A stretch of 57,111 nucleotides of DNA, filler included, from Sluysia triapertura (lineage: Eukaryota), in NCBI GenBank assembly GCA_046118255.1. It is 4 parts of 4 records of this genome, joined end to end, with 100 filler letters (N's around TTAATTAATTAA, not from the genome) between each part and the next. Parts side by side here need not be neighbours in the genome. Positions count along the whole stretch, not along the records: positions 38,827 to 57,111 come from JBJNIA010160820.1; 3 more parts are not named here. One strand, written 5' to 3'. Positions within the stretch are counted from its first letter, which is position 1; every line of letters starts with the position of its first letter. Below, one piece after another: positions 38,827 to 57,111 of the stretch. The translations under genes were made by a program, and so were the position numbers. The notes under the pieces are model-generated. The model worked only from the letters and a program-made list of their open reading frames with translations, had not been told where the DNA came from and did not search any database.

Positions 38827-38827
38827 A

Positions 38828-40457
38828 CTTAATAGATAAATTTAGAAATTTGATTTCGAGTAGTTTACAATAATCTATGACTTCGTGATTCTTAAGTATC
38901 GTGAATTTGATTAAAGGACTCATATAGTTAATAAAAAGAAAATAATTCATATCTTTTGTACTATTTAACGTTTGATTAAGTGATCGAAGTTTTGGTGTAG
39001 TGTTTGAGTTATGAATCGTCATCATAACGTAAGACAAAGCGGTTGAATGAATGAGAGAATTAATTGCTGTCAGTTTTGGCATTTTGTACATGACATTTAC
39101 TAATGTTACTGTAATTATAGGTTTATGCTTATAATTATCATGGAAACTTTTACATAATATTACTTTATGTTCCCAGATTATTTCTCTCTGCTACTCTTTA
39201 CAAAAGTAAACTAACTTCATCATTGATAACAACAAGTTTAGAGTATTTTTTTATATCATTAAGAAAAATTATATGAAATTTAATTAACACCCTTTTATTA
39301 TATACCACAAAATGTTTATTTTACAAAATAAGTCTTCTATTGACTGGAATTTATCTTGTACTTTGTTGCATTACACTGATCCTAAGTCTAAACACGTTAT
39401 CTGAAATATAAAATGTTAGAAATTCAAAATAAAATCTTACATACAATACCCGATTGTGAACAAACTTCCTAATAAACTTCGATAGCTCTGTTATACATTG
39501 AACTGTTTGAGGAATTTTATTAATAATCAGTAATCTAGATAGTTGTTGGCCAGACATAATTAAATTAATTCTTATAACTCGTATTGTAATCGGACACTTA
39601 AGCATAACTTTTTTTTATCTCTAAGGCTGACCATACACTTGATCTCCAATTAAGACTTTTCAATGAATTCTTCAATACAGGAAACAAGTACATAAAACGA
39701 CTCTCATCTAATAAAATTAACGAAATCGCTAACTCGGCATCGATATATGTGATACTAAAGATAGTTGATAATTCACTTCTTTCTCGCTCACAATGAATAA
39801 ATGATTTCATGATTACAAACAATTTCTTTTCCAGCAATACCACCAAATTGACTTTTTCTTTGTGTAATGATGAACTATGCATAGTTGACAAAGGTCTTTT
39901 AACGCGTTCAATAGTTTCTGTTTAAGTTTTCCATTCATATAAACTAACATATTATTTTTTAGGAATTTACGATATATTTTCAAAGAACGATCGTTTTTAT
40001 ACAGATTTTCGCCAAAAACCACAGAGGCATCAAAATAATTTAATAAAAGGATTATAAACTTTATGATAAAACGATTAATCATAGTATCACTTTCTAATAG
40101 CATATTAACGTGAGATATTAAGCAATTATAACTAAATCATTTAGGTTCACTCTCGTTAATGTTTCAATATCTGTTTGTTGTATTTCATAATGAGAAGTAA
40201 ATGAAACTTTATAATTTTGAAGTACACAGTATTGATTGTAGACAAGACATAGACCATTGAAAAAGTCTTCATTACTATAGATTTCTAAGTCATCTTTAGA
40301 TAGTTTGATTAGTTGAGATTTGATAAGTTTGATCAATTTTCTGTTGAACTCGTTTGTCTGATAACTGTTTTCGTTCAGGTTATGTTGACGACATTGCATA
40401 GCCAGATAACGATACCAAATGTACATCACCTTGTTTAGTATCTAAATTTTTCTCCAT
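38828..40457 (-). pseudogene. Unidentified decayed long coding region
   Basis: A chain of adjacent or overlapping minus-strand ORFs (40118-40429, 39813-40103, 39598-39891, 39351-39605, 38828-39091) is consistent with one frameshifted gene. Confidence 0.4.
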
Positions 40458-40602
40458 TAATTTACCAAGAATAAAATTCAGAATTTTGTTTTAATTTTTA
40501 TTATTGTTATTCACAAAATAATTGGACTAATAATTTTTGAGTTACCAGAAAAAATAATTTTTTGTTAGGTCACAATTTTTATTTTTATGTCTCCTATTAT
40601 TG

Positions 40603-40662
40603 GTCATCCAATTGGGGCCTTTTAAAAGTAATATACATAAAACTAGGTCTCGATTGGATGAT
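40603..40662 (+). ncRNA. Pre-miRNA-like hairpin 1
   Basis: UCAUCCAAUUGGGGCCU (40604-40620) pairs fully with AGGUCUCGAUUGGAUGA (40645-40661): 17 bp with 3 G-U pairs and a 24-nt loop. Confidence 0.5.
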
Positions 40663-40689
40663 GTATGTGATGGCTAAATTATGATTAAA

Positions 40690-40799
40690 AATTAATACGA
40701 CTGATGATTGACCATCATCAGTGTTGGCACTTTAATGAAAAATGTAACATATAATGTTAACACTGGTGATGGTAGCGACCAGGTTGATCGTCATTAATT
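40690..40799 (+). ncRNA. Pre-miRNA-like hairpin 2
   Basis: ACCAUCAUCAGUGUUGGCA (40711-40729) pairs fully with UGUUAACACUGGUGAUGGU (40755-40773): 19 bp with 3 G-U pairs and a 25-nt loop, plus a basal stem. Confidence 0.5.
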
Positions 40800-40994
40800 G
40801 AAAATTTTAGTACTTTAATGAATTGCTAATAATAATAATAACAATAATAATATTGTTATTATTGTTATTATTGACAATAAAACGCATAAATCTTGTCTTT
40901 AATAAAAATTACACAATCTTCTCTTTCAAATCCTTTGTTCCTTCTAACATATTAAATAAAGAGAGAAAAGAAAAATAAAAAACAATTGGTATTA

Positions 40995-41054
40995 TGTGAA
41001 GGAACAACGGTAACATGGTATACTATGCTTAAGTTATCGTTGCTGCCTTCCACA
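40995..41054 (+). ncRNA. Pre-miRNA-like hairpin 3
   Basis: CAACGGUAAC pairs with GUUAUCGUUG (10 bp, 1 G-U), and UGUGAAGG pairs with CCUUC(C)ACA. The loop is 18 nt. Confidence 0.4.
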
Positions 41055-42571
41055 AAAGAAATGAAGTCTTTAAAACGATATTAAATTTATTTTGAATTTT
41101 TGAAGATGAAAATGATTTGAGCTGGAAGTGAAACAAAGAATGTTAGAATAAATTCTTGAGATTTATTTAAAGTTTATAGTTGAAAATAAGGTTTAAGCAT
41201 TGACTGTAATGGAACCTCTTAGTCGAGTTGATTATAAAAATACTCAGAGTTTTTGACATTTAAAGTTATATTTAAAACCAGTTTCGGATTCAATAAATAA
41301 CAAAACATTAAAACGACGTAATAGCTGTAATTCGAGAAAAACATATTTAGGTTCCATACATGGACTTTATTTGTAGATATAATTGCTTAAAGGGATCTGT
41401 TAAATTAAACTGATAGTTATTTAATATTACAAAAATGACGAATATAATTTAGAATTATTGGACGTCGTCTATTGGACACAACAAATGTAAGAATTTGTAC
41501 GAATATTAAGAGACGTAATTTATTAAAGTTGATTGGTACTTATAAATGAAATATTTCAAAGGTTTATAATGTAAGAGTCTAGAGATAAGTTTAAAAAAGA
41601 AATCAAAATCTTTGAACTAGACCACATAACATAAAAATAAACCAGTACAATTACTTATATTGGTGATTAAGGTAAAAGGAATATAAACTATCTTAAGTAG
41701 ATTAAATAACGAATAAGCCCTTCTTATATAATTTAAAAAGTTAAGGCGTCACTGAAGTTATAATTATATAATTGTAAGGAATACAGTCATCTAAAATAAA
41801 GGTTAGATACGAGTAGAGTTTTTAGAATAATTTCGAACCTATAAGTACTATTACCTGCGAATACGTCACCTTAGGCGGACCATTATTTTTTATACAATTT
41901 GCTAAAAGAAAAAATACTAGCAATATGCATTAGAATTTAATTATAGACATCCAATTTTCCGATTATTTCAGTGTCTTAATCATTCTCGCTTTAAATTTTG
42001 CTTTCAGGTAAATATTTTTAAAGTCTTTCTCGTGCAACTTCAAAATACTTTAACTAAAAAATTATCATAAATTATATCAAAAATTTAGAAAAAGTTAAAA
42101 AATTAGTCAAGAAAGCAAATATTTACTGTTAATGATAAGTTTGAAGTTGTAATGGTATCAAAAAAATGACACCGTATGAATTTTATTGTTAAAGAAATTC
42201 TTGTATGATTACAAATATAAAAATAATTTCAGAACCGAATGTGTCATGTTATGCATTACATTTAATTTTGATATTGATATGAAAAACTTAAATAAGATAA
42301 CAATAACTATAATTTAATCATATTTAATTAAAATGTGAACTCTTAGAATTATAAAATGATTATATTTATTTTAAAATAATTGTAAAAGTAATTGAAAATT
42401 AAATGTCACAAAAAATTGAATTTAGCTTTTATTTAAAGAATTAATTTCAACTTTGAATATTGTTTAGTGTCTTAAAACATTAAATAATATATGAAATATA
42501 AATCCTTCTTCCCTTGTTTGTTTAAAATATTTATTAATTTAGATTTTAAGTGTGCGTCACAAAATTGAAGA

Positions 42572-45500
42572 ATGATGAATAAATATGTGAATAATAAAGT
42601 TATTGTTATACAGTTATAAATAATAATATTTTAGAATACTGATGCTGATGAGAAAACTGATTATGCTATTGGTGCAATATGTAGCTTTTTAACTGATAGA
42701 ATAAATTTAAGCCAAGCTGAAATTTCACGTGGTAAAATACATGAATTTTAAACTATTCTTTTGTAATAATATAATACTTTAAAAATGTGAATATTGTGGT
42801 CTATGTTTTAACTTAAATTAAAAAATGAAGTAATGCGTCAAGTTAACTGTTTTATTTAGAATTTCCCTGTCAAGTTTCTAATTTGGATAATTCAGAATGG
42901 AACATGAATGATGAGGATGAGGACGAGGATGAATTAGCAAGGTAATTAAAAGTACAATTTAATATTTTTTGATGGTGTTATAATTTATTCGTAATGAAAT
43001 CTACGTTATCGCAAATATCGCATTTATATTTTAAAATTTATACTTAAAATGATTAATTACTTGCCTCAATTCAAAAATAACAAAAAATTAAATTAACTTT
43101 ACAGTGATATACTAATCAACTGTAATTATTTTATTACTTTATGGACCACATGAGATCTCATTATTTTAAAGTCTATTTTATTTTGAAGTTGCAGTTATTA
43201 AAAAAATGCGACCTTGACGGATAATGTCTTAAATTAAAATATAGTCTAAGTGACTATAAATGTACAACTTATTATTTTTAATTACTTTTAAAAATATCAA
43301 TTTAATTAAAATTTGCAATTTTTGTATTTAGTGATAGTGATGAAGTTGAATATTTGAAGAAATTATGTTTAGAAGAACTAAGAATACTAACAGAAAAGGA
43401 AGAGATGATTAAGAATCATAATGATTTCTATATAAATGATGATTTTTGTTTGTTTAAGCCTAAGTATGCATTAAAAGAAGATTCGGTTGGTATTTTTATT
43501 ATACATTGCATAAAATTATATAATTAAATATAAAAGCAAGAATGATTGAATCTGCAGACTTTCTTGAAAAAATATTGATTAAATTTCAAATTATAATTGA
43601 AAGTTATATTAGCAGAGTTGTAACTTTGTAAGCAAAAATTTTATATTTTTTCTGATTCTATTGCTTTAAATTATTTTAATTTTTTTAAATAAAATTCCTT
43701 TGTATTATTTACCAAGATTTTATCATTTTTCGTTTCAAAATAAATTAAGCTTTTGGATACACTTTACCGTATACCAATTTAAATCAAAAATGTTCATTAT
43801 TTTTGTGCTTGCATTTACAGAATTACGGTTTTTATTTAGTGCACTGGTTATATTAGTCTGTGCACATTGAAATAATACTTTTTAAATGTAGAGCAGCTTC
43901 AAATTACTCATTTAGTATATGTTACATAGCGAGAATCATGTTCGTTTAGAAAATGTTTAAATTTTAAAATTTTAAATTTCTAAATTTTGTAAAATATACA
44001 TTCATACTTTGTTTAATAATAGTATGAATTTATAATGAATAATTCTTGTTTCAGGACAAAAACCAGAACTTATACAATTCTGGTTATAACCATTGTATGC
44101 CAAAATCACATTTATCGAATCTTTTGGCTGTGGCACAAAATAAATTTTCATTTAAATACGCCAACTGCAATAACTTTACAAACGATTCCATAAATGATTA
44201 CAAAAAGATCACTTATCAACAAAAATTCAATCGTCGTGTCAATATTACTAATGATAATGATGTACGTAATCGTGTACAATGCGGAAATAAAATTGAAGAA
44301 TCTAATTTTACGATTTTACCTTTGAAATCGCTTGAATCAGTACAACATTCATTTGAAAACGTCAGAAATGAAACTAAATCGATAATCGATTTTACAGATT
44401 TTGATAAAATCGATGAATCTAATCAAAGAAGCTTTTCATATCAAAATTCTGTATGTGAAAAATCAGTCGAAGATATTCTTTCAACTTCATTGAATGAAAG
44501 CTTTAATAAATCAATGAATATTTTATCGTCTATGGAAAATAATATTCAAATACTAGAGATAAAATTGACGAATAAAAAGCATAAGTTAAAGAGATACGAA
44601 AAAAAAGTAGATGCGGACATAATTTCTGGTAAAATTAGAAATCTTAAAAATATTGTTGATGTTAGTTAAAATTAATTAATTACTTTTATTTACTTTATTT
44701 AAATTAAAATTAGTGAGAGTTCACTTAGAAATAGTGTCATACGATATTAATTTTTCACTTAATTTATCTTAAGAACATAGTCTCTAATTTGCAATAGATG
44801 AAAAACTACTACTGCTTCGCTAAGCTTAAGAATAAAAAAATATTATTAGTATATATTAAAAATTCAAATGTATAAGGTTTATGTGGTGAATTCAACACAA
44901 CAATAAATCATACGTAGCAAACAAATTCAATGGACAATTTACAACCTTTTATAATCACTTTAAATTTTAGACACCAACTAATAAATTATTTCACATTTGC
45001 AACATGCTTACGTATAAACAGGATTTAAATATTTTATGTGCGTTATCACTTTATTATTCCCAGTTATTTTTGTTTTTATTACAGCGTTTATTCCGTTATC
45101 ATTTTATTCTTATCTTATATTTATCGCTACTGTTCTACACCTACTGCTATAATTTTATCATCTTAGCTTAACTTAATGTACTGTATCAACAATTTATTAC
45201 AATCCACGATCTAAGTTAACCAACATTAACCAGAAAGACAACAAGCACGAATTAACAAGTAAATCTCGGTACCGCTACTACGTATCCATTTCAAATTATA
45301 GTAATACTACATTCTTAATAAACAATATAAATATTACCAAAAAGAAAATGTTGATAATTCCAGAGATAAGATAAGTTAGTTCCAATTATTAATACCTCAG
45401 ACAGTGGCATAAGCCATGCAAATATTGGGTTAATCAGAAATGAACAGAAAATAAAAAATTCTTAATGAGGGACGCGCTAGTTTATAACTACATATTTAGC

Positions 45501-48500
45501 TCCATGTCTGAAATGAAGAGGAAGGTAGAAATTTATAACATGAATTATAAAAATTTTATCCAACATGAATATCAACAAAATATTGCTTGAGAATTTCCCC
45601 GAATTTGTACAAGTATTTTTCGACTTAGCAATATTTTCAGGTTTATAGTGGTACTAAATTATAAAATAATATTTTGTATGTTGGTTACAAGTTATTTTCT
45701 ACTCATTTTTAAGCACATGGAAATTAATACAGACTCCAACAGAATTAGAACAGCGTCCATAATTTCTAGAAACTTTGGACAATAACACGGAGTTCACGTG
45801 GTCGTCAGCTCGACCAGACGAAATGAGGTATTCCAAGATTTACTTGTCTGAGTTAATGTGAATTTAGGTTTTAAGTGTTCACACATAGTGTGGGGTAATG
45901 CATTTTGTTATCATTATTTAATCGAAAATATTTTAGGAAAATTTGAACAATTTTATAAAAACGACAAAATTATTGTTAAACTTATTACCGTATTCAATTT
46001 TCATATAGTTATAATTTTTATTAATAACTTCGTGTTTAAGGTACTTAGGAACAATTATATTAGTGCAACTGAATTATATTAGGAGATACAAAACGTAAAC
46101 AAAATCATTCTTGAGGCGCAATCACAGTTTAAAAGGTTAAAAATTAAAGTCTCATGTATATAAAGGCGCATAGGCCGCGTATTCACATTTACCAGATCTG
46201 GAATTTTCACAATGAGTCGAAGTATTGTTTGTTTTGTCATTTTAGATACTGTTCTAACTACATGATCTGTCATCTCAAGAAACCATACAATTTCAATTTG
46301 GTATTCAATTCTCAAATTTGACACTCTTTGAATCCGTTCAGTATTGACACTCTTCAGAAACTTACACATGCAACCATTGGTGGAATTACATATCGCAGCT
46401 TCAGTGCAATCACATTTGGTTTCCATAAACAGTATGACATCCGAATTATAGGTCAATTTTTCAACACAGACTGGTACAGTTATAAATTGTGATCTGCTAA
46501 AACTTTCATTTACAATTTTGTGTATTAAATAAACATTACTCCAAGTATGTCCGCAATGGTCATTGTTAACATTCCATCCTATTGATAAATTAGCCTTCTT
46601 GTTAGAATAAAGTTTTAAAAATACTGATTTATCTACTTTAACAATTTGGCAATAACTGGACTAAATTATATCAGCATTTAAAATCAATAAGTCACTAATC
46701 AAATGTTGAATATCATTTAAAACTGATTCAATTACATCATCTAATTTAATAATTTTACGAGTTTCTTTTATAAGCTCAATAAATTCATAAAGTTAAATCA
46801 GTATTGGACAGATGACAGTGATAAACTAAATTTTTAAACACATTAAACATTAAATCCGTTTCAATTGCATCACTATCACTTAATGTTTTAATTAAACCTT
46901 GCTTTGTATTTACTACATAACACAATTTAGATAAAGCATAGAGAAACATAATTAATCTATATAAATTAATTCTAAATTAATCTAAAATATTAGAAATTTA
47001 AAGTGTTTCAAAAATATTTTCGCTGTCAGTGAACATAAGTTAATAGCCTGATATGTATTAAGTAAGTTATCAAAGCAAATATCAGAGTAAATATTACTAA
47101 ATAATTTTTGTGAATGGATATAAAATATATATAACTATATATTATTTATATTGTTAAAATTCTTCACAAAAAAACAAATTAAAACAAAAAGCTTTTTTAT
47201 GAATTGGTTGAAATCGACTGTCCTCGAAAGAGCTCTTGAATTTATACTCTTTTAAATTTTATACTAAATTGTTTTTTTTTGTAAATTTAAGGAATTGTCA
47301 GTAGCTTGACACATGAATGAACTGTAATTAGATTGTGATACTTTTGAGCTACTTCAATAGATAATAATTGAGACTTGTAAATGTTTTTTGACGATCTGAC
47401 GTGGGTAGAATTTGAAAATCGATTAATGAAAACAAAATTCGAAATACATGATGTTCACCATCTGATCTGTAAAAATCTATTTATTGATTTATTTCACCAA
47501 CAATGTTTTTATATTTTTTCTTGTTTAAAGACTTAACAAGACTGTTAATTTCAGCAGAAGCTACGAAAAAAATTATGTCATTATGAATTTCAACAAATTT
47601 ACCCATCTATAAAATATAAAAATGGCATCCCAGATAAACATTTATATGATACACAAATAATATACACTAAAAGAATGGTGTTCAAGTGATGATGAGATAA
47701 CAACAAACGTTACTTAAATGCTAATAAACAAAATATTAATAAAATGTTAGAGGTTTTGTTATGCGTCTATGTTTTGTTAATGATGAAAGGTGTAATAGTG
47801 TAAGGATTACGGATGAACTTTGTTTTAGTGTGGTTTTTGTGGTTTATGATTAGAGTAAGTATAATGTATGTAATCTAAGAGGCATTACATCTTATAAAGG
47901 CATTAAGTCTATTTGTTAATAAAGTTGAAAAATTAATTTTTCTTAATAGAGTTATAAGATAAAGTTTATTTCAATATTACATACAATTGATTTAATATAC
48001 AACAAAATAAATGGAAGGAAATAGTTAAACTCCTCACAAGAACTATTAGAAAACTTAATTTGATAGTTTTATTATGTTTTAATGTCATTATTTTTTAGAA
48101 AACTGTTCGCGAAATTGAATCTTTAGAAGCAGAAATCAATGCTTACAATTATAAAGCATTAGGATTTGCAGGTGAGTTGGGATGTGAAGCTAGTTATATA
48201 ATCAATAATGAAGTTCTGAAAGGAAATAATAGTAATATTGATAAAGATGAGCACATCAATGCCAATAATACCGCTAAAATTGTCAGTAGTCAAAATAATA
48301 TCAATGAATATATTTGCAGTAATGAAGATTCTGCTAAAAGTCAGAACAAACCTCAATCACATAACACCATATCAAATTCTGATTTTGAACCAATTGATGA
48401 TAATTTAGATAATGATAGTAAAGATGAAGATATTAAAAATCGAAGCAAAGTCCAATTATATAACTCACATATAATGCTATGTAAAGAATTAATAGAAGTA

Positions 48501-51500
48501 AAGGATGAAGAAATATTAGTTTTACTAAAAGCAGCTGTGGAATATTTGTTTAGAATTAGGCAAAATAATAGAGCTATTAATGAAGAAATTCGATTATCTA
48601 CTTGTAAAGCTTTTGAGAAATTTGTAAATTTTTCAGAAATACCTTCTATATTCTTAAAAGATAATGATGAAAAGCAATGCAAATGTTAGTTTTATTTTTA
48701 AAAATATTCTTTGTAATAAATATTTGTTGTGTCATTCCTTAAAGTATTGTCAACGATATATTCTAAAAAGTTATTTAATTAAGACTAAACACACCGTCGG
48801 TCTATCTATACCAATTCTTACCAGCAAAGGTCAAATGACCCATGTCTATAAAATCCTATCCAATTATTTCATTTATATCTAATAATAACTGTTATAGTTT
48901 TTCCTTATTTTGATTTAAGTTTTGGATAAATTTATTCCACACTTCAGGGCAAATTTATCAGTTTCTAGGCGTTTGCTTCATTGGATTTTATTATCAACTC
49001 AGTTCAATTGAATAATCTCAGAAAGCATTTCTGCTCATAATTTTTGCGAAAAATGTAGGTCTCCATTTCTTATTCCACAGAAATGGTATGAACCACATGC
49101 ACAGAGAATACCAATCATTCTCTTGATAAAGTTATCAAATATTTTTTACACTTATCTGGAATTGTTCGTTCACTCGTCGTAGATGGAACGATGGAAGTGC
49201 AAAATTTGATTGCCTAGATTCTAAACACTTAAAAACGTTACAGTTGAGTTGTTTGAACAGCAAATATCTTTAAGTGAATTTAATTAAATTTCATTAGGAA
49301 GAATTTTACTAGCAAAAGTTTTATTAGTAGTTATTATTATTATTATTAGTCGTTATTTATCTTAACGACATTCTTATTTAATTTAGAAGACCTACGAAAT
49401 CCAGACAATCTTTATTAGATTTTATAAAATTACAAAATTTGTGCTTACGGCAAATCAAAACGTTCGTACTCTGCTTGTGAGGGCGAATAAAATAAAAATA
49501 GACCAAAATTGTTTTATTAAAATGTAGAAATTACATCAATATAGTCATTTTTAAAATACGACAGAGAAACATAAGGCTAAAAGAAAAGATCTTACACTTG
49601 TAATATATCCTGTATCCAAGTATTCTCACTCTAATGGCACGACGAATATCTGCGACGCTTGATATGTCCTTAAAGTACGCATACAATTGCACCATGGGTT
49701 TGCCTAAAAGATATCTTAATCATCTTTAAATAATTCAAATGATTGAAATTGGTGTTATAGCTCGGTTGATGACACGAGTATTTGATAACATAAAAGGAAA
49801 AACTGGTAAATACAATTCTTAATTCAAAATTACCGCCGGACTGTATTAAGAAAATTATAATCACTTCAAAACAATTCAAATGTTTCAATTCCATGTCCTT
49901 ATATTGTTTATAATACAAATAGTGCATAACGTAAAAAACATGATCATGAGAGATATTTTGTGCGACTTCGCAATGTTCATTTTTACGACGAACGGTGAGC
50001 TCTAGTAATTTGTAAACGACGTTATTTGATAATATATCAATTATAACATTGCTATACTTATGAATAGATTTAATAGAAATAATCAAAAATGGTAATTTAA
50101 TTAAATCTTCATGAATGTTATCGTATGAAGTATTTATACATTGGTCTAAGTTTTGTTAAACTATTCAAATCGAAGTTAGACTTCAAGCCGGAAATTTCTA
50201 ATTTAAATTCATGACTAGCTTTAGAAGTCGATTTCAAAAGATGTTTAAATTCACTTCTGTGACTCTGTCTGTCTTTTTGTTAGTGCCTGAAGATATAGTT
50301 TATAATTTATAACCTTTTTCAGATATTCAGTCATAAGGGACTTCTTGTGATACTGCATCCTTTAATCGACGATTATTCGATTTGTGCTCATACCTATGCT
50401 TTATATTTAGGTTCATCTTAGCACAATTCAAATTTATAGGCTCCAATTCATCGAAATCAAGTTTCACGCTTTCAATAATTCTTCAAAAACAGTCATCTGA
50501 CTCCTCATCGCCTTTGAAACATTCAACACGTCTGGTACAATTCCTTTTAGTCTTTATTTCAAAATCTTTTTCCGCAACATCAGCCTCATTTAGTAGCATA
50601 ACAATCGTTTTATCAACGGATTTTGAATGCTAACACTCTCTTGCAGTATCCATAATTTTCTCAAAATTGGGTTTTTTATATAACATTTCGATTTAGCATT
50701 AATAAGTTAAAAATTTTCGTACATTCTTTCCTTAAAAAAATTTTTTTAAACTTTTTCCAAAATATTAATATTTAAACATTTAAATATTTAATATTTAAAT
50801 AACATAAATAGACCTTTTCTTTACATATTTTTTTGTTTTCTTTCTTTATAATTTTTTTCTTCTGACTTTCTTTTCCCTTTACAATGAGATAAACCAAACA
50901 ATTCTTCTCTCTCATTCGACAAAACACAAAAGCCTTCTGACATTTAACTTTTAACGAATATTGCATTTATGTTTCGGAAGCCCAGGATTATGTAGTCCTT
51001 GGTGCATTCTAATACTTATCTTAAATCAAATATTTTTTCGCATATATCTCAGTTATATTGATTAAATTTCCAATTTAAAATACATAAAAAGTACAAAAAT
51101 ACCAAATAGTTAGAATAGTAATAAAAGTTATTACAAAGTATAGTTTTAGAATTAGCTCTGTCAGGTGATAAAGAAAGGCGATAATATAATACAATAAAAG
51201 GGTAGTGTTGCAGTGATGATGAGGTGACAACAAGCGTTACGTATTATATAAAAAATCTTAATAAAAAAGATTTTATTATGTATTTATGATTTGCCAATGA
51301 TAAAAGATGTAATAATACAAATATTGTGAATGAATTTTATTTTAATGTGATTTTCATTTGTGATGAGATTTATGTGGTTGATGGTTGTAGTGGATGAGAT
51401 GTGTGTGATATAATAGGCTGTAACACCACATACCTTTCTTTAATTAAGAAAAACGCTGAATTTACACAAAATATATTACACTAAATTGTTAACATCGTAA

Positions 51501-54443
51501 ATAAAATAGTTTATACAAAATACGAAATGCTCGTATTCTAAAATTGAATCAATCAAATATCGTCTATAGTTAATCAGTTAAGTTAATTAATTTTACAATT
51601 GAATACCCTTTTTCTTCGGATTGACTTCTTAAAATAATACTTTTCGGGATATGATAATTGACAATTAACTTTTTTTTCGGAATTGATAAATGACTTATTT
51701 AATAATACCTTTTCGAAATGATTTGTCGGCGAAAATGTATCTCTATTTATATCCATGGAATAAATTATTATTCCATGAAATGCGTTGTAATTACTTTTTT
51801 CCATTAAATTATTTTGTCTAATTACTTATTTGAATGAAAATCCATTAAGTATTTCTTCTTTCTTCAATCCATTAGGTATTAATTACTTTTCTTTATAATC
51901 CATTAAATAATTAACTATTTTTGTTTTCTTTTAAAATTTTGTATTATTTAATAATTAAATTTTATATGTAAAATAATTAATTTAAATTTTATGTAAGGAT
52001 TAATTTAAATTTGAAATGGAGATTAAACTAAATTTGAAATGAGTTTTTATTTTATTTTTTTTTAATTTTAGTTAATATTTTTTTGTTTTTATATATTTTT
52101 ATTTTATTTACATAATAAAATCACGCAACTTTTCCAAAGACAATTTCCATTCAATTACAGTTATCAGAATGCTTCTGCTTCGGTGTATTTTATTATTTTT
52201 TTCAACAAACTGTTATCAATATTCAATGAAAATGCACTTAACTTTTGCTTTCGTAACATTTACTGTTTCCGTGCGAAAGGCAGGCAGGTTGTGAACCACT
52301 GTATCTTTCTTGCCAAATTGTCCCTTCTGCTGCTATATCTAAATCCTCTTCCTGGATATATTTTGAATTCGAATGATTGCTTGTATTTGTCGTCTTTACG
52401 TATTTTCAAAGTATTCAAATCCTCTATCATTTTCGGTGGCCTCAAATTCCTCTGTTGTGTCAAATGAATTATCCACACTTTCTGATAGCTCTGAATCTCT
52501 ACATTTTGAACTCTCTTCATTTATATTCGTAATCTTTTCTAGTAACATGTTATGTCGTATAATGTTGGACATTTTGGGGATAAAAGCAAGGAAACAGTAA
52601 TTGAAAATTTTGTATCCAGATAAATAATGCTGAGTTCTAGACTAAACTGTAAATAATAAAAGATCCAGGACTAGTCTACCGATGACTCAATGTAGCAAAT
52701 AAATTACGCGACAAAATATAATATTACCATTAATGTTAGCAATTATACGTCGTAATAAAAATGAGGTACTACAACAAAAAATAAACAATTGAAAATGTAA
52801 TATTCAAAAGTAATCAACCTTAAAAAGCGTAAAAAACATGACTTCATAGACTTTGTTATTGGGTAGGCACATGAATGGGTGTTATACCTCTACATGTATA
52901 TTTAATAACATTATTTTGTTAACTTTTTTTACATTTATAAACATTATAAGTAACCTGAAAACCTCATATCTACATAGATTTAAGTCACAGTAGTTTATGC
53001 AGGGTTGCATTTTTTCTTGAAAAAGAAGGAATTATTGTTTTAAGAATAGTCATTGCAAAAAAATTAATATAATTGGTGGTTTAGTAAAAAATCATATAAT
53101 AACCCTTAAATGGGTCAATACACCCGCCACGGTATGTTTAGTGTTAAGTGAATAGTAATAAGTTCTTTATTCATTTCAAAAGCTTTTATTATCTAGAAAA
53201 GTAAATATATAAAACCATTATATAATGCCATTATATTGACAGATTTTATATGGTTAATTTATATAGTTTACTTATAATATCAAAATAATTATTAATTGTT
53301 AAATACTGTGTATTCTTCTTTGGGCATTTAATTATTCAATGTATATTTAAGTATTTCATACTGTTTAATAAACCACATTTTGATATTTTACTTTGAGAAT
53401 GGAGTTAATTCACGTTTTTTATGTTTTTCATCACGTACCGTCTTAATAGGTAATAATTTTGCATATATCGTATGTAATTTATATATTTTTATATTTATGG
53501 TAATTGAAAACTATAGTGTATGATGTACGAACCAAGAAAATGAACCATCAAAGTATACAATATAATTGCTTTAATATAATTTAGATTTATACGACAATTT
53601 TATAAGGCCTGAGAAGAGGGAACCAATGAAAATTTATCCTCGAATGCTAGTTTTCAAAATTATACTAGATTTTGTTAAGAATGTCTATGAATTAGAAAGT
53701 AACGTTAGAATTTCGAATGCGGACAGATCTTTAACTGAAATAGTAGGACTTCGTAAAGTATTTTTAACCAAGCCAAAATTTAAAAAGTTCAAATTATGGG
53801 GTAGTATTGATGAGTAAGTTATTTAACATAATTTTTATATAATGTTGAATAAAAAAATTTGAACTAAAATTTTTAAATTCCAAATCAACACATTTATTCT
53901 CCAATTCATTTATGTTAATTCAAATACAAGTGAATGTAAAAATGTTATAACGAACGCTAAAATGTGTCTTATTGAATTAATTAATTTATGTTTTACAGGA
54001 TAATATGGAGGAAATTTTCGATTGACTGTAAACTTCTTCCAAAACAAGGAGTGATCAGAAATTACAACAGTTTATATAAATTTACTTTTATAGAATTTAT
54101 GGTTAATATTTGTGTTGAGATATCGTCTGCATATAAAAACGTCAAATTTAAATTGTTTTTAATTAAATGTAAAATTTTTAATTCATCGAATTTATTTAGA
54201 CCCGATACAATAGAATGTCTTGAACGTTTAGTGCATAATGAATTATGTGATGTGCATTTATTGTCCAGTTATCATGATGGTTCTGAACGAAAAGAAAGAC
54301 CGCAGTTAAGTAAAATTAAAACCTGGTGCTTAAATAAACATAAAAATTTTATTGATGGCCTTATAGTATACGAATTGTTTAGAAAAGACGATACAGGTTA
54401 TCCCGATATAGTTTTAAACGAACTTGAATTTTTAAATGCTTGA
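42572..54443 (+). CDS. Unidentified 8-exon gene, about 737 aa (exons 42572-42586, 42635-42731, 42860-42941, 43332-43485, 44055-44660, 48099-48684, 53585-53813, 53999-54443)
   Basis: All seven GT-AG junctions are phase-compatible and give one open frame. The product has an acidic tract, a predicted coiled-coil stretch and a globular-looking C-terminus. The start exon and a possible extra intron in the last exon are uncertain. Confidence 0.65.
46090..46460 (-). pseudogene. Possible AWS/SET/post-SET methyltransferase relic inside an intron
   Basis: CDCTEAAICNSTNGCMCKFLK..ERIQR (AWS-like), THCEN in an alternate frame (compare NHSCxPN), and NCDCAS (post-SET-like). Heavily deleted. Confidence 0.35.
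48783..53143 (-). mobile_element. piggyBac element with both termini, transposase split by a 3-kb insert
   Basis: TTAA at 48779-48782 and 53144-53147. TIRs GACTAAACACACCGT and CACTAAACATACCGT. Transposase SAFSLNIDNSLLKKIIKYTEAEA..WKLSLEKLRDFI (about 52240-52114) resumes as IGILCACG..FAKIMSRNAF..KRLETDKFA..VWNKFIQN (about 49115-48918). Confidence 0.8.
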
Positions 54444-54949
54444 TTTTTCGTAAATAAAAATTGGTATGCTCTTAATTTAATTTAGTAATAAATATGCAGT
54501 GCTTTATGTATATTACCGTGTTACAAAATTATATATAAAGAAATTTTGCTTGTGGGTGTTTCGATATGATGTAAAAATCAATAACAATAGTAAAATAATG
54601 TAAATAATTAATGATACCATTGAATGTTCAAAAAATGAAGTGCTAATGTTGAAACAGTTAATAATATAATTTTTTTGATAGATCTTTTAATAGATTAATG
54701 TATGATTATTAAATGAAAGTAATTAACAAATGCTTGATTACGAATGAATGAATAAATATTGCTGTTTAAAAGTAGTATTTTAATTGTATTGGAATGATTA
54801 TATGCATCTAAATGTATGACAAATAATACTGAATGTGCTAATATTACATAATTTTCATGTAAATAAGTATTAATATTAATACAAATTATAATATATTCGG
54901 TTCCGGTCAATAATCTTTAATTGGCGTTAAATTCATAAATCAAAAAATT

Positions 54950-55320
54950 AAAAAGCCCTTTCCACACCCCACTATCTGCGCAATTGTCTACATTGGGACA
55001 AATTCTTTCTTGTTATTGATAATAATAGATAATAATACATATTTCTGTGTCAAACTCAATGACATAGAACCTCTGCTTATTCCTCCTCTTTCTAAATATG
55101 TTGATACACCCACTACCATACGACTACTGTTGTATCCCAAATTCCTACTCTTTACTCTTACTACTTTCCTAAAAATAATCTTAGAAAGGCTTTGTGTTAT
55201 AGAAGGCACCACCACTAATTATGAAGCTAATTTATCCTGCACCACGATTGATGAGTGTCTTGCTGTTGAGCTTATACCCAACGAGCATCCTGAAAGTTCT
55301 TATTTGGGATCATAAAAGTA
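54950..55320 (-). mobile_element. Merlin/IS1595-like transposase relic
   Basis: RKVVRV..S..YNSSRMVVG..GGISRG, RFYVIE and ..PN..WKG resemble KIVEIDESKFGKRKYNRGR..GGIERG..SDxWKGY. Many disruptions. Confidence 0.45.
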
Positions 55321-57034
55321 ATATGAATTATAAAAGTAATAATTCTATGATTGGATTTAATTAATTTTTTTATTAAATTAAATTAATAAATCAATTTTGT
55401 TATCATTTTCAACGCGAATATACTGGTACATAGCCTGCAGGCTTAGCCATTTTTTGAGGAAGCTTCGGTTTGTTCGACATCTTTTGCATTATCTAAATGC
55501 CTTCGATAGTCGATACTTTTCATCATCACTTCGATAGTCAACTATTTTGGGCAATGCTTACATTACTTCTTCTGAAGCTTGTGGTAAAAATGCTTCTAAT
55601 TCTGATGGCCGCCATTTCTATTAAATCCCAGTCTTTCGATAAGTGTGTTCTTAACAAACTGTTCGCCTTTATTCTTTTTTTGAAAACTCCGAATGCAAAT
55701 TATATGTATCTGGAGCTGATACCAAATGGTAGTCGATGATTAATAAAAGTTTATATTTAGTTTAGTAAAAGTATCCAAATCTACTCGTGTCTCACAGGCA
55801 CCAGTTTCTAAATTTCAATTCATTAAGCAATTTTTCGATCGTAATTTGTTGATTTCAGAGTGTTAGTTTGTTCCGTTTTTTGTGAACTCTGATTCACGAA
55901 TAATGTCTTTTGTGTGATATAAAGTATTAGGTATTCGAGAATGAATGGGACTATAGAAGAGCTATTCAGAAAATTACCTAGCGTTATCACTGTAAACAAT
56001 ATATACCGAAAAGTTTCACTTTTTCGTATTTCTTTAATTGCAAGATGAACATCTGAGAGTGATTCGAGAATATCTTGTTCTGTAGACTAGAAATGCATTT
56101 GAAATAACTACCCTTCGAGTCAAAATTTAAGAAGATTGATTGATTGAGTTCGTATAAAAATTTTTCCACACCATGACTAAATTCTGAATTCTTCATAGTT
56201 TCATTTATTACTTTTTTGATTTATGATCTTAAATTTTAATTTTATTATCTCCACAAGATAAGAATTTGCCACAAAACTCATCTTTGGATAATTGCTAGAT
56301 AATATTAAGACGGAAATTCGACAGAAATTTATGTTCAATTTTGATAAATAAAACCGACTCAATTGAGTCGAATTCCCGACTTCATAGCAATTATCTAAAC
56401 ACTACATAAAGAACGACATTTTTCTATCATTTAACATAAAATAAAAGAATATTATAACTTTTGCTGTAAGAAGGCTGATTCAACACAGTAGTGGCAAACA
56501 CTGATTGAATCTTAAAATTCTTTAGAAATCGGACTAAATTTTATTTAAAGGCCCAACTTATTGGTGGTTAGTTGAGTTCTGAGCTCTAATATTTATTATA
56601 TTTTGAGTATCGCTGAGATTGAGTATTATAAATGAATTAATTATCATAAAAGACTGTGTATATTACTTAATCATTATGTGATTTTATTGTGATATATTTG
56701 TAATATATTGAGATTGAGACTCATTAAATTGTCTTCTAAAATTTAGAGAGTATTAAAAAAGATAAAAAAAACAATTTTAATATCTCATCAACATACAATC
56801 ACCGAACAAGTCAAAATATTTAACAAAACTTTGAATCATAATCACATATTCTGTTATCAAATATTCCTTTGTAGTTTCTGTGCACAACATCAAGCTTAAA
56901 CATTCCATATTTATATAGTTTTTTTTGTTTACGCAATTCAGTATCATTGCAGACTGAACCTACTCAACTACTCAAAAACACTAGATACACAATCATATTT
57001 AGAAAGAAATAAGCTTTATTTCTATATGCAAAAG

Positions 57035-57036
<2 letters not shown>

Positions 57037-57088
<52 letters not shown>

Positions 57089-57111
57089 CATAATCATAAT
57101 CATAATCATAA
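57037..57111. repeat. Compound microsatellite (TAA)n followed by (TCATAA)n
   Basis: Read directly from the sequence; it runs to the window end. Confidence 0.95.

What the first reader, a model, noticed from the sequence alone, without database searches (positions are those of the whole stretch)
40603..41054. Cluster of three pre-miRNA-like hairpins with strand-specific G-U pairing
Seen: three hairpins of about 60 nt lie within 450 bp (17-bp, 19-bp and interrupted 18-bp stems; loops of 24, 25 and 18 nt). In the two uninterrupted stems all six non-Watson-Crick positions are G-U on the + strand and would be A-C mismatches on the - strand. That pattern suggests selection on a + strand RNA rather than a DNA palindrome. 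The arms are unrelated to each other and GC-richer than the flanks. Inference: a polycistronic miRNA cluster about 1.5-2 kb upstream of, and co-oriented with, the 42.6-kb gene. An alternative is a structured lncRNA or rDNA-spacer relic.
Basis: partly seen in the sequence, partly recalled or inferred. Interest (0 to 1): 0.7.

Follow-up and report, generated by a model that had tools for sequence, protein, structure and literature searches.

The report
Three clustered plus-strand RNA hairpins, unverified miRNAs
Three GC-rich 60-nt hairpins sit within 450 bp of very AT-rich DNA between two genes and look like a species-specific microRNA cluster, but no read data, related genome or known family could be reached to confirm that they are processed.

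Summary
H1 (40603-40662) has an 18-bp stem, H2 (40711-40773) a 19-bp stem, and H3 (40995-41054) an interrupted stem.

H1 and H2 are the only uninterrupted stems of 17 bp or more with real G:C content on either strand of the 18.3-kb piece. At -27 and -28 kcal/mol they fold better than any window in 8 dinucleotide shuffles of the piece. H3 (-21.7) is not exceptional alone.

Arms are 42-56% GC, loops 12-28% and flanks 22-27%. All seven non-Watson-Crick pairs in the H1 and H2 stems are G-U on the + strand. The 541-nt region folds 27 kcal/mol better on + than on -.

The miRNA reading is plausible but untested (about 0.42). Rfam gave nothing above 19.5 bits. Metagenome and viral contig scans and paper texts gave no match. 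The one genome hit lies inside an archaeal reductase gene and looks like chance.

A DNA-level reading stays open. H1's arms are inverted CCAAT-box motifs, and the same 9-mer recurs near the downstream gene's probable first exon. If the hairpins are real miRNAs, they are new members of a known kind. Interest is modest.

The parts
40603..40662 (+). Hairpin H1: 18-bp stem (4 G-U) and 24-nt AT-rich loop. A 7-bp lower stem, 40594-40600 / 40667-40673, has 3 more G-U pairs. The arms hold inverted CCAAT motifs.
   Evidence: MFE is -27.0 on + (z -5.2) and -12.9 on -. MFEI is 1.24.
40711..40773 (+). Hairpin H2: 19-bp stem (3 G-U) and 25-nt AT-rich loop. An alternative 12-bp lower stem, 40702-40713 / 40782-40793, has 3 G-U pairs, with a bulged mini-hairpin at 40771-40780. 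An upstream 9-mer (40700-40708) can also pair with the 5' arm.
   Evidence: MFE is -27.9 on + (z -3.8) and -20.5 on -. MFEI is 1.28.
40995..41054 (+). Hairpin H3: interrupted stem of about 24 bp with a 10-bp core. It is equally stable on both strands. Its 5' arm can also pair with 40932-40944.
   Evidence: (pair I17). MFE is -21.7 on + and -21.4 on -. MFEI is 0.84. This is within the range of the best chance hairpins in shuffles.
40822..40878 (.). (AAT)n/(ATT)n low-complexity palindrome between H2 and H3. It is not counted as a hairpin of interest.
38828..40441 (-). Block of abutting open frames of 87-121 codons in different frames on the - strand. It is an orphan gene or a frameshifted pseudogene. 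Its upstream end lies about 160 bp from H1, so the hairpins sit in a divergent intergenic region.
   Evidence: No Pfam match and no homologue were found. The codon-position signal is weak.
42635..48686 (+). Downstream + strand multi-exon gene. Open frames with AG/GT boundaries occur from 42635, for example 42635-42731, 44055-44666 and 48099-48686. A probable non-coding first exon ends at a CAG|GTAAAT donor near 42008. The exact splicing model was not resolved.
   Evidence: The 48099-48686 frame has a clear coding signal (GC1 0.39, GC3 0.16). No homologues were found.
40170..40235 (+). Weak mir-305-like hairpin 370 nt upstream of H1, inside the - strand open frame. Judged a chance match.
   Evidence: 24 bits against a gathering score of 66, E 0.21. 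(z -1.7).

Best explanation
The locus is a lineage-specific cluster of microRNA-like precursor hairpins read from the + strand. A Pol II transcript would start in the 160-bp gap after the - strand open-frame block, or further upstream. It would carry H1, H2 and probably H3.

Each hairpin would be cropped at the base of its GC-rich stem by the Microprocessor, giving a pre-miRNA of about 60 nt. Dicer would then cut that into a duplex of about 22 nt drawn from the GC-rich arms.

Shown here: the hairpins, their statistical excess, their + strand bias and their composition contrast. Inferred: transcription, processing and any target regulation.
For: 1. H1 and H2 are far beyond chance, and all three are the most stable + strand spots in 18.3 kb.
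2. All 7 non-Watson-Crick stem pairs in H1 and H2 are G-U on +. The lower stems add 6 more. The 541-nt region folds at -133.0 kcal/mol on + (z -6.2) and -105.6 on - (z -4.1).
3. A strand-blind scan for imperfect DNA palindromes with GC content found only four loci in the piece. The two outside H1/H2 carry transversions and A.C mismatches. So H1 and H2 are not the lucky tail of a large population of decayed palindromes.
4. Arms are 42-56% GC, loops 12-16% and background 26%. This is the pattern expected if the arms are constrained and the loops drift.
5. All three share one geometry (60-63 nt, arms of about 20 nt) with unrelated sequences. That points to a size-measuring process rather than a sequence-specific one.
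6. MFEI is 1.24, 1.28 and 0.84. H1 has about 25-30 bp of total helix including its lower stem.
7. Spacings of 108 and 284 nt are typical of polycistronic miRNA clusters (established knowledge).
Against: - There is no expression, processing or conservation evidence at all.
- No known family matches.
- Stems of 18-19 bp without a single mismatch or bulge are unusual for animal miRNAs.
- H2's lower stem needs a 10-nt bulged side hairpin exactly where Drosha would cut. H3's lower stem is poor, and H3 shows no strand bias and is not statistically exceptional alone.
- The G-U-only pattern within each hairpin is partly a result of how uninterrupted stems are detected.
- H1's arms are inverted CCAAT-box motifs in a divergent promoter region, which offers a DNA-level reading.
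- The organism is unidentified, so the presence of Drosha and Dicer is only assumed from the animal-like gene structure.
Confidence: 0.42

Rival explanations
1. These are DNA-level inverted repeats with no processed RNA. They would be palindromic promoter or regulatory modules of the divergent gene pair, or relics of small foldback or terminal-inverted-repeat elements. H1 would be a pair of inverted CCAAT boxes.
For: - The cluster lies in a 1.45-kb region between a - strand open-frame block ending at 40441 and a + strand gene.
- H1's arms carry CCAAT on + at 40608-40612 and on - at 40653-40657.
- The 9-mer around it recurs once more at 41948-41956, next to the probable first exon of the + gene.
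- H3 is equally stable on both strands.
- The stems are near-perfect, as in young inverted duplications.
Against: - Repeats of 18-19 bp are much longer than a factor-binding half-site.
- All 7 arm differences are transitions giving G-U on the same strand. The lower stems exist only on +.
- No other copy of any arm occurs in the 18.3 kb.
- No transposon protein domain occurs anywhere in the piece.
- No target-site duplication is evident at the hairpin borders.
Confidence: 0.3
2. This is a structured + strand RNA that is not a Dicer substrate. It could be part of a long non-coding or promoter-upstream transcript, or of an upstream leader or intron of the downstream gene. The hairpins would serve as protein-binding or stability elements.
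For: - The same + strand structural signal applies.
- Both H2 and H3 have an upstream segment that can pair with the 5' arm instead of the 3' arm (40700-40708 for H2, 40932-40944 for H3). That resembles alternative-pairing switches more than simple precursors.
- The stems are shorter than the roughly 35 bp preferred by the Microprocessor.
Against: - No Rfam family of any type matches, including snoRNA, 7SK, telomerase, RNase P/MRP and SECIS.
- A box C/D reading of H2 fails: there is no CUGA D box and the guide regions are buried in a 19-bp stem.
- A box H/ACA reading of H3 fails: there is no pseudouridylation pocket (sequence inspection).
- Three independent hairpins of about 60 nt are not a known architecture outside miRNA clusters.
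Confidence: 0.2
3. These are chance hairpins in AT-rich sequence.
For: - H3 alone lies within the range of the best hairpin in shuffled copies of the piece, -19 to -24 kcal/mol.
- Other spots on the - strand reach -22 to -24 kcal/mol.
Against: - H1 and H2 exceed every window of 8 shuffles.
- They are unique in the piece for uninterrupted GC-containing stems.
- They lie 48 nt apart.
Confidence: 0.05

Closest known systems
Polycistronic animal miRNA clusters of young, lineage-specific families (for example the Drosophila mir-310 or mir-972 clusters, or C. elegans mir-35-41)
   Same: Several unrelated or loosely related hairpins of about 60 nt lie 100-300 nt apart on one strand in intergenic DNA. 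Their arms are more constrained than their loops, and they contain G-U pairs.
   Different: No reads, no conservation and no family match are available here. The stems have no mismatches or bulges over 18-19 bp. Lower stems are weak (H1, H3) or interrupted by a side hairpin (H2).
mir-8 / miR-200 family
   Same: From my memory of the family only: H2's 3' arm contains the 8-mer that begins miR-200a/141. Like that family, the match is on the 3' arm near the loop.
   Different: The Rfam scans, which cover all 4227 families, returned no mir-8 match even at E 10 on 541 nt. A 22-mer starting at that 8-mer would run 6 nt beyond the stem. The rest of the arm aligns only with an indel. This is treated as coincidence.
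mir-305 (Rfam RF00732)
   Same: A hairpin at 40170-40235 on the + strand, 370 nt upstream of H1, aligns over the full model. The 3' arm shares 11 identical bases with the consensus.
   Different: It scores 24 bits against a gathering score of 66, with E 0.21. From memory, the seed differs by one base. The fold z-score is only -1.7. No mir-275-like partner exists in the window. It lies inside a - strand open frame.
Paired CCAAT boxes (NF-Y sites) of bidirectional promoters
   Same: H1's two arms each contain a CCAAT pentamer in opposite orientation, in a region between divergent genes. The extended 9-mer recurs near the other gene's probable start.
   Different: The repeat extends to 18 bp. Its differences are all + strand wobble pairs. 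H2 and H3 have no such motif.

Membership tests
miRNA gene (MirGeneDB-type criteria) | At least 16 complementary nucleotides between the two arms of a hairpin | tested here: met
   H1 has 18 bp, H2 19 bp and H3 about 24 bp interrupted.
miRNA gene (MirGeneDB-type criteria) | Loop of at least 8 nt and a precursor size of about 55-70 nt | tested here: met
   Loops are 24, 25 and 18 nt. Hairpins are 60, 63 and 60 nt.
miRNA gene (MirGeneDB-type criteria) | 20-26-nt reads from both arms with 2-nt 3' overhangs and homogeneous 5' ends | not testable with these tools
miRNA gene (MirGeneDB-type criteria) | Extended pri-miRNA stem of about 33-35 bp, with about 11 bp of lower stem below the cropping site | tested here: inconclusive
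   H1 has a 7-bp lower stem after a 2x4 internal loop. H2 has a 12-bp lower stem, but with a 10-nt bulged hairpin at the junction. H3 has no simple extension.
miRNA gene (MirGeneDB-type criteria) | Conservation of the arms over the loop in related species | not testable with these tools
   No relative of this genome is in reach.
Any described miRNA family in Rfam 15 | Covariance-model score at or above the family's gathering score | tested here: not met
   The best scores in 40560-41100 were 19.5 bits for mir-BART21 (gathering score 70) and for MIR2593 (96.2), and 17.8 bits for mir-789 (100).
Box C/D snoRNA | C box RUGAUGA and D box CUGA brought together by a terminal stem, with single-stranded guide regions | tested here: not met
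   A CUGAUGA lies at 40701-40707 with a 4-bp terminal stem. The 3' partner reads UUGA, and the would-be guide is buried in the 19-bp stem. The Rfam C/D hit scores 16.4 bits against a gathering score of 48.
Transposon-derived hairpin (MITE or foldback) | Multiple genomic copies, target-site duplications, or a nearby transposase | tested here: inconclusive
   There is no second copy of any arm in 18.3 kb, no transposon domain in the 56 ORFs scanned and no obvious duplication at the borders. The rest of the genome could not be searched.
rDNA spacer | Adjacent rRNA genes or spacer repeats | tested here: not met
   There is no rRNA match in the piece at E up to 10. Apart from the low-complexity (AAT)n/(ATT)n palindrome at 40818-40898, no direct or tandem repeats occur at the locus.

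The most novel reading that the evidence does not exclude
The hairpins are real Dicer substrates of an unsampled, fast-evolving AT-rich animal lineage. Even a clearly coding 196-codon exon of this lineage has no detectable relative among 1.84 billion protein representatives. Their mismatch-free, G-U-only duplexes would mark them as siRNA-like or plant-like precursors rather than classical bulged animal miRNAs. They would be made from a divergent promoter transcript that also carries alternative-pairing segments upstream of H2 and H3, which could gate processing.
Probability: 0.1. Interest if true: 0.5.

Novelty: new member of a known kind. Interest (0 to 1): 0.3.

Why it matters
If confirmed, the locus would add three new miRNA families to a genome that appears to have no sequenced close relatives. 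It would also illustrate how, in a 26% GC genome, functional RNA stems stand out as GC-rich islands with AT-rich loops, which is a cheap predictor for annotating such genomes. This would be routine annotation rather than a new principle. If the hairpins prove to be promoter palindromes, the case warns that G-U strand bias in two hairpins is not enough to call an RNA gene.

Tried and rejected
- **Rfam.** I scanned the 18.3-kb piece and then the 541-nt locus alone at E up to 10. Only generic hairpin matches below 20 bits appeared.
- **mir-305-like hit at 40170-40235.** Rejected: 24 bits against a gathering score of 66, fold z -1.7, and no mir-275-like partner.
- **miR-200a/141 seed in H2's 3' arm.** This was recalled from memory. 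The scans, which cover all 4227 Rfam families, returned no mir-8 match, and the geometry does not fit.
- **Paralogy among the hairpins.** Rejected: alignment scores are at or below the shuffled mean.
- **Box C/D, box H/ACA, SECIS and a CRESS-virus origin stem-loop.** H1's loop has a near-nonamer. These were examined by eye and by Rfam, and their defining boxes or pockets are absent. No Rep-like domain occurs in the neighbouring ORFs.
- **tRNA or SINE origin.** No tRNA was found.
- **Relatives through proteins.** These returned nothing: the exon 44046-44666, the ORF 40121-40441(-) and the FH2 exon by word search; the exon 48099-48686 by full HMMER search; and nine ORFs by exact look-up.
- **Relatives through DNA patterns.** The metagenome scans and viral scans returned nothing.
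- **The one genome-contig hit.** It lies inside a class II ribonucleotide reductase ORF of a Nitrosopumilus MAG. The arms match over 14 and 19/20 nt with the same 29-nt spacing. The loop is unrelated, and there is no flanking DNA or protein similarity. I treat it as a chance match selected by the scan, although the length of the match is somewhat surprising.
- **Paper full-text search for the arm strings.** It found only PCR-primer coincidences.
- Read laying was therefore unusable.
- **Spliced gene model.** I did not build or search a joined model of the downstream gene. My first exon chain is not frame-consistent into the 44055 exon, so the model is left open.

Full report
**Setting**

The usable piece is 38827-57111, at 26% G+C, with no tRNA genes and no significant Rfam match.

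It looks like an intron-rich, animal-like eukaryote:
- Open frames of 100-200 codons are scattered on both strands. That is far more than a 26% GC sequence yields by chance.
- On the + strand from about 42.6 kb they are bounded by AG/GT sites.
- The frame 48099-48686 has a clear codon-position signal.

Only one Pfam domain was found in 56 open frames of 55 aa or more. It is a Formin Homology 2 exon at 55826-56086 on the - strand.

No protein search returned any relative. A full HMMER search of 1.84 billion representatives with the 196-codon exon gave none. The organism could therefore not be named, and no orthologous locus could be fetched.

**The observation**

| Hairpin | Coordinates | Stem | Loop | G-U pairs | MFE + / - (kcal/mol) |
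|---|---|---|---|---|---|
| H1 | 40603-40662 | 18 bp (40603-40620 / 40645-40662) | 24 nt | 4 | -27.0 / -12.9 |
| H2 | 40711-40773 | 19 bp (40711-40729 / 40755-40773) | 25 nt | 3 | -27.9 / -20.5 |
| H3 | 40995-41054 | interrupted, 10-bp core | 18-nt apical part | 3 | -21.7 / -21.4 |

No stem position in H1 or H2 is an A.C opposition on the + strand.

**Is it more than chance?**

- In an 80-nt sliding fold of the whole piece, the three hairpins are the three most stable + strand places. The background mean is -8.2 with sd 3.7.
- An exhaustive search for uninterrupted Watson-Crick/G-U stems of at least 14 bp found only H1 and H2 with real G:C content (7 G:C pairs each). Everything else is AT-only low complexity.
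- Eight dinucleotide shuffles of the piece never produced a window at or below -25 kcal/mol. They did reach -19 to -24, so H3 alone is ordinary and gains weight only from its position.
- Arms are 42-56% GC, loops 12-28%, and spacers and flanks 22-27%.
- The arms of the three hairpins are unrelated to one another. No arm has a second copy in the piece.

**Strand bias**

In 130-nt contexts, H1 gains a 7-bp lower stem (40594-40600 / 40667-40673). H2 gains a 12-bp lower stem (40702-40713 / 40782-40793). Each contains three further G-U pairs.

The 541-nt locus folds at -133.0 kcal/mol on + (z -6.2) and -105.6 on - (z -4.1).

The G-U-only pattern inside each stem is partly a consequence of how uninterrupted stems are detected. 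To allow for this, I scanned for imperfect DNA palindromes regardless of strand. The scan used 18-nt arms, at least 14 Watson-Crick matches and at least 6 G:C pairs. Only four loci exist. The two outside H1/H2 carry transversions and A.C oppositions. H1 and H2 are therefore not the selected tail of a large population of decaying palindromes. This moderately favours constraint on a + strand RNA.

**What it is**

The most economical RNA-level reading is a cluster of miRNA-like precursors. It rests on:
- a shared size of 60-63 nt and arms of about 20 nt;
- unrelated sequences;
- spacings of 108 and 284 nt;
- MFEI values of 1.24, 1.28 and 0.84;
- arms that resist the genome's AT drift while the loops do not.

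Against it:
- The stems have no mismatch or bulge over 18-19 bp.
- H2's lower stem needs a 10-nt side hairpin at the expected cropping site.
- H3's lower stem is poor.
- Nothing in Rfam matches. The best score is 19.5 bits against gathering scores of 60-100.
- No expression or conservation evidence could be obtained.

**The DNA-level rival**

This rival is real. The cluster lies between a - strand block of open frames ending at 40441 and the + strand gene. H1's arms are inverted CCAAT motifs, and their 9-mer core recurs at 41948-41956, beside the probable first exon of the + gene.

H2 and H3 each also have an upstream segment able to pair with their 5' arm. That could point to a switch-like structured RNA rather than plain precursors.

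**Searches elsewhere**

- Pattern scans allowing wobble changes found nothing in the metagenome contigs (H1, H2) or the viral contigs (H1, H2, H3).
- The bacterial and archaeal genome scan gave one hit for H2, inside a class II ribonucleotide reductase gene of a Nitrosopumilus MAG. It has the same 29-nt spacing, but the loop is unrelated and there is no flanking or protein-level similarity. I regard it as a coincidence picked out by a 596-Gb scan.
- Full-text paper searches for the arm strings returned only PCR-primer coincidences.

**Verdict**

The inference of a + strand structured RNA is reasonably supported. The miRNA label is plausible, at about 0.42, but untested.

The rivals are:
- DNA-level promoter or repeat palindromes, about 0.3;
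- a non-Dicer structured RNA, about 0.2;
- chance, about 0.05.

If real, this is a new member of a known kind. Small-RNA reads and a genome-wide copy count would settle it.

Noticed in passing
window 55826-56086 (-): This exon matches the Formin Homology 2 domain (Pfam FH2, E 2e-8, profile positions 176-217) and carries the GNxxN motif. PDB phmmer gives only weak similarity to Diaphanous-1. A formin gene therefore runs on the - strand at the far end of the piece. It is the only recognisable protein domain in 18.3 kb.
   Followed up: partly
window 47656-47820 and 51183-51340 (+): Two segments of about 150-165 nt, 3.5 kb apart and in the same orientation, are 80% identical. Both contain GUGAUGAUGAG and AAUGAUGA/AAUGAUAA motifs but no CUGA box. 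This could be an intronic segmental duplicate, a dispersed repeat or a duplicated micro-exon.
   Followed up: partly
window 38828-40441 (-): Five abutting or overlapping open frames lie on one strand in different frames. Three are exactly 107 codons long. They have no Pfam or homologue match and only a weak codon-position signal. This looks like a frameshifted orphan gene or pseudogene whose upstream end faces H1.
   Followed up: partly
window 48099-48686 (+): This 196-codon open frame has a strong coding signal (GC1 0.39, GC3 0.16, 71% purine at position 1). It has no hit at E 0.001 among 1.84 billion protein representatives. The lineage appears unsampled, or the exon evolves very fast.
   Followed up: yes
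L001 448-501 (Nitrosopumilus MAG OZ250170.1): A class II ribonucleotide reductase coding sequence contains a 14-bp wobble-containing inverted repeat. Its arms match H2's arms (14 nt and 19/20 nt) at an identical 29-nt spacing. The loop and flanks are unrelated. I take it as coincidence, but the match is longer than the search pattern required.
   Followed up: yes
window 49052-49131 (-) and 56302-56381 (-): These are the next most stable 80-nt folds in the piece (-23.5 and -22.6 kcal/mol), on the - strand. The second is an imperfect palindrome with transversion mismatches.
   Followed up: no
window 53988-54440 (+): The nearest ESM Atlas neighbours of this 151-aa open frame (score 0.84, a lead only) are short arthropod and fungal hypothetical proteins. 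Some of them carry the piggyBac-type DDE_Tnp_1_7 domain. Pfam itself finds nothing.
   Followed up: no
window 57036-57111: An (ATA)n microsatellite of about 25 units degenerates into (ATAATC)n at the edge of the piece.
   Followed up: no
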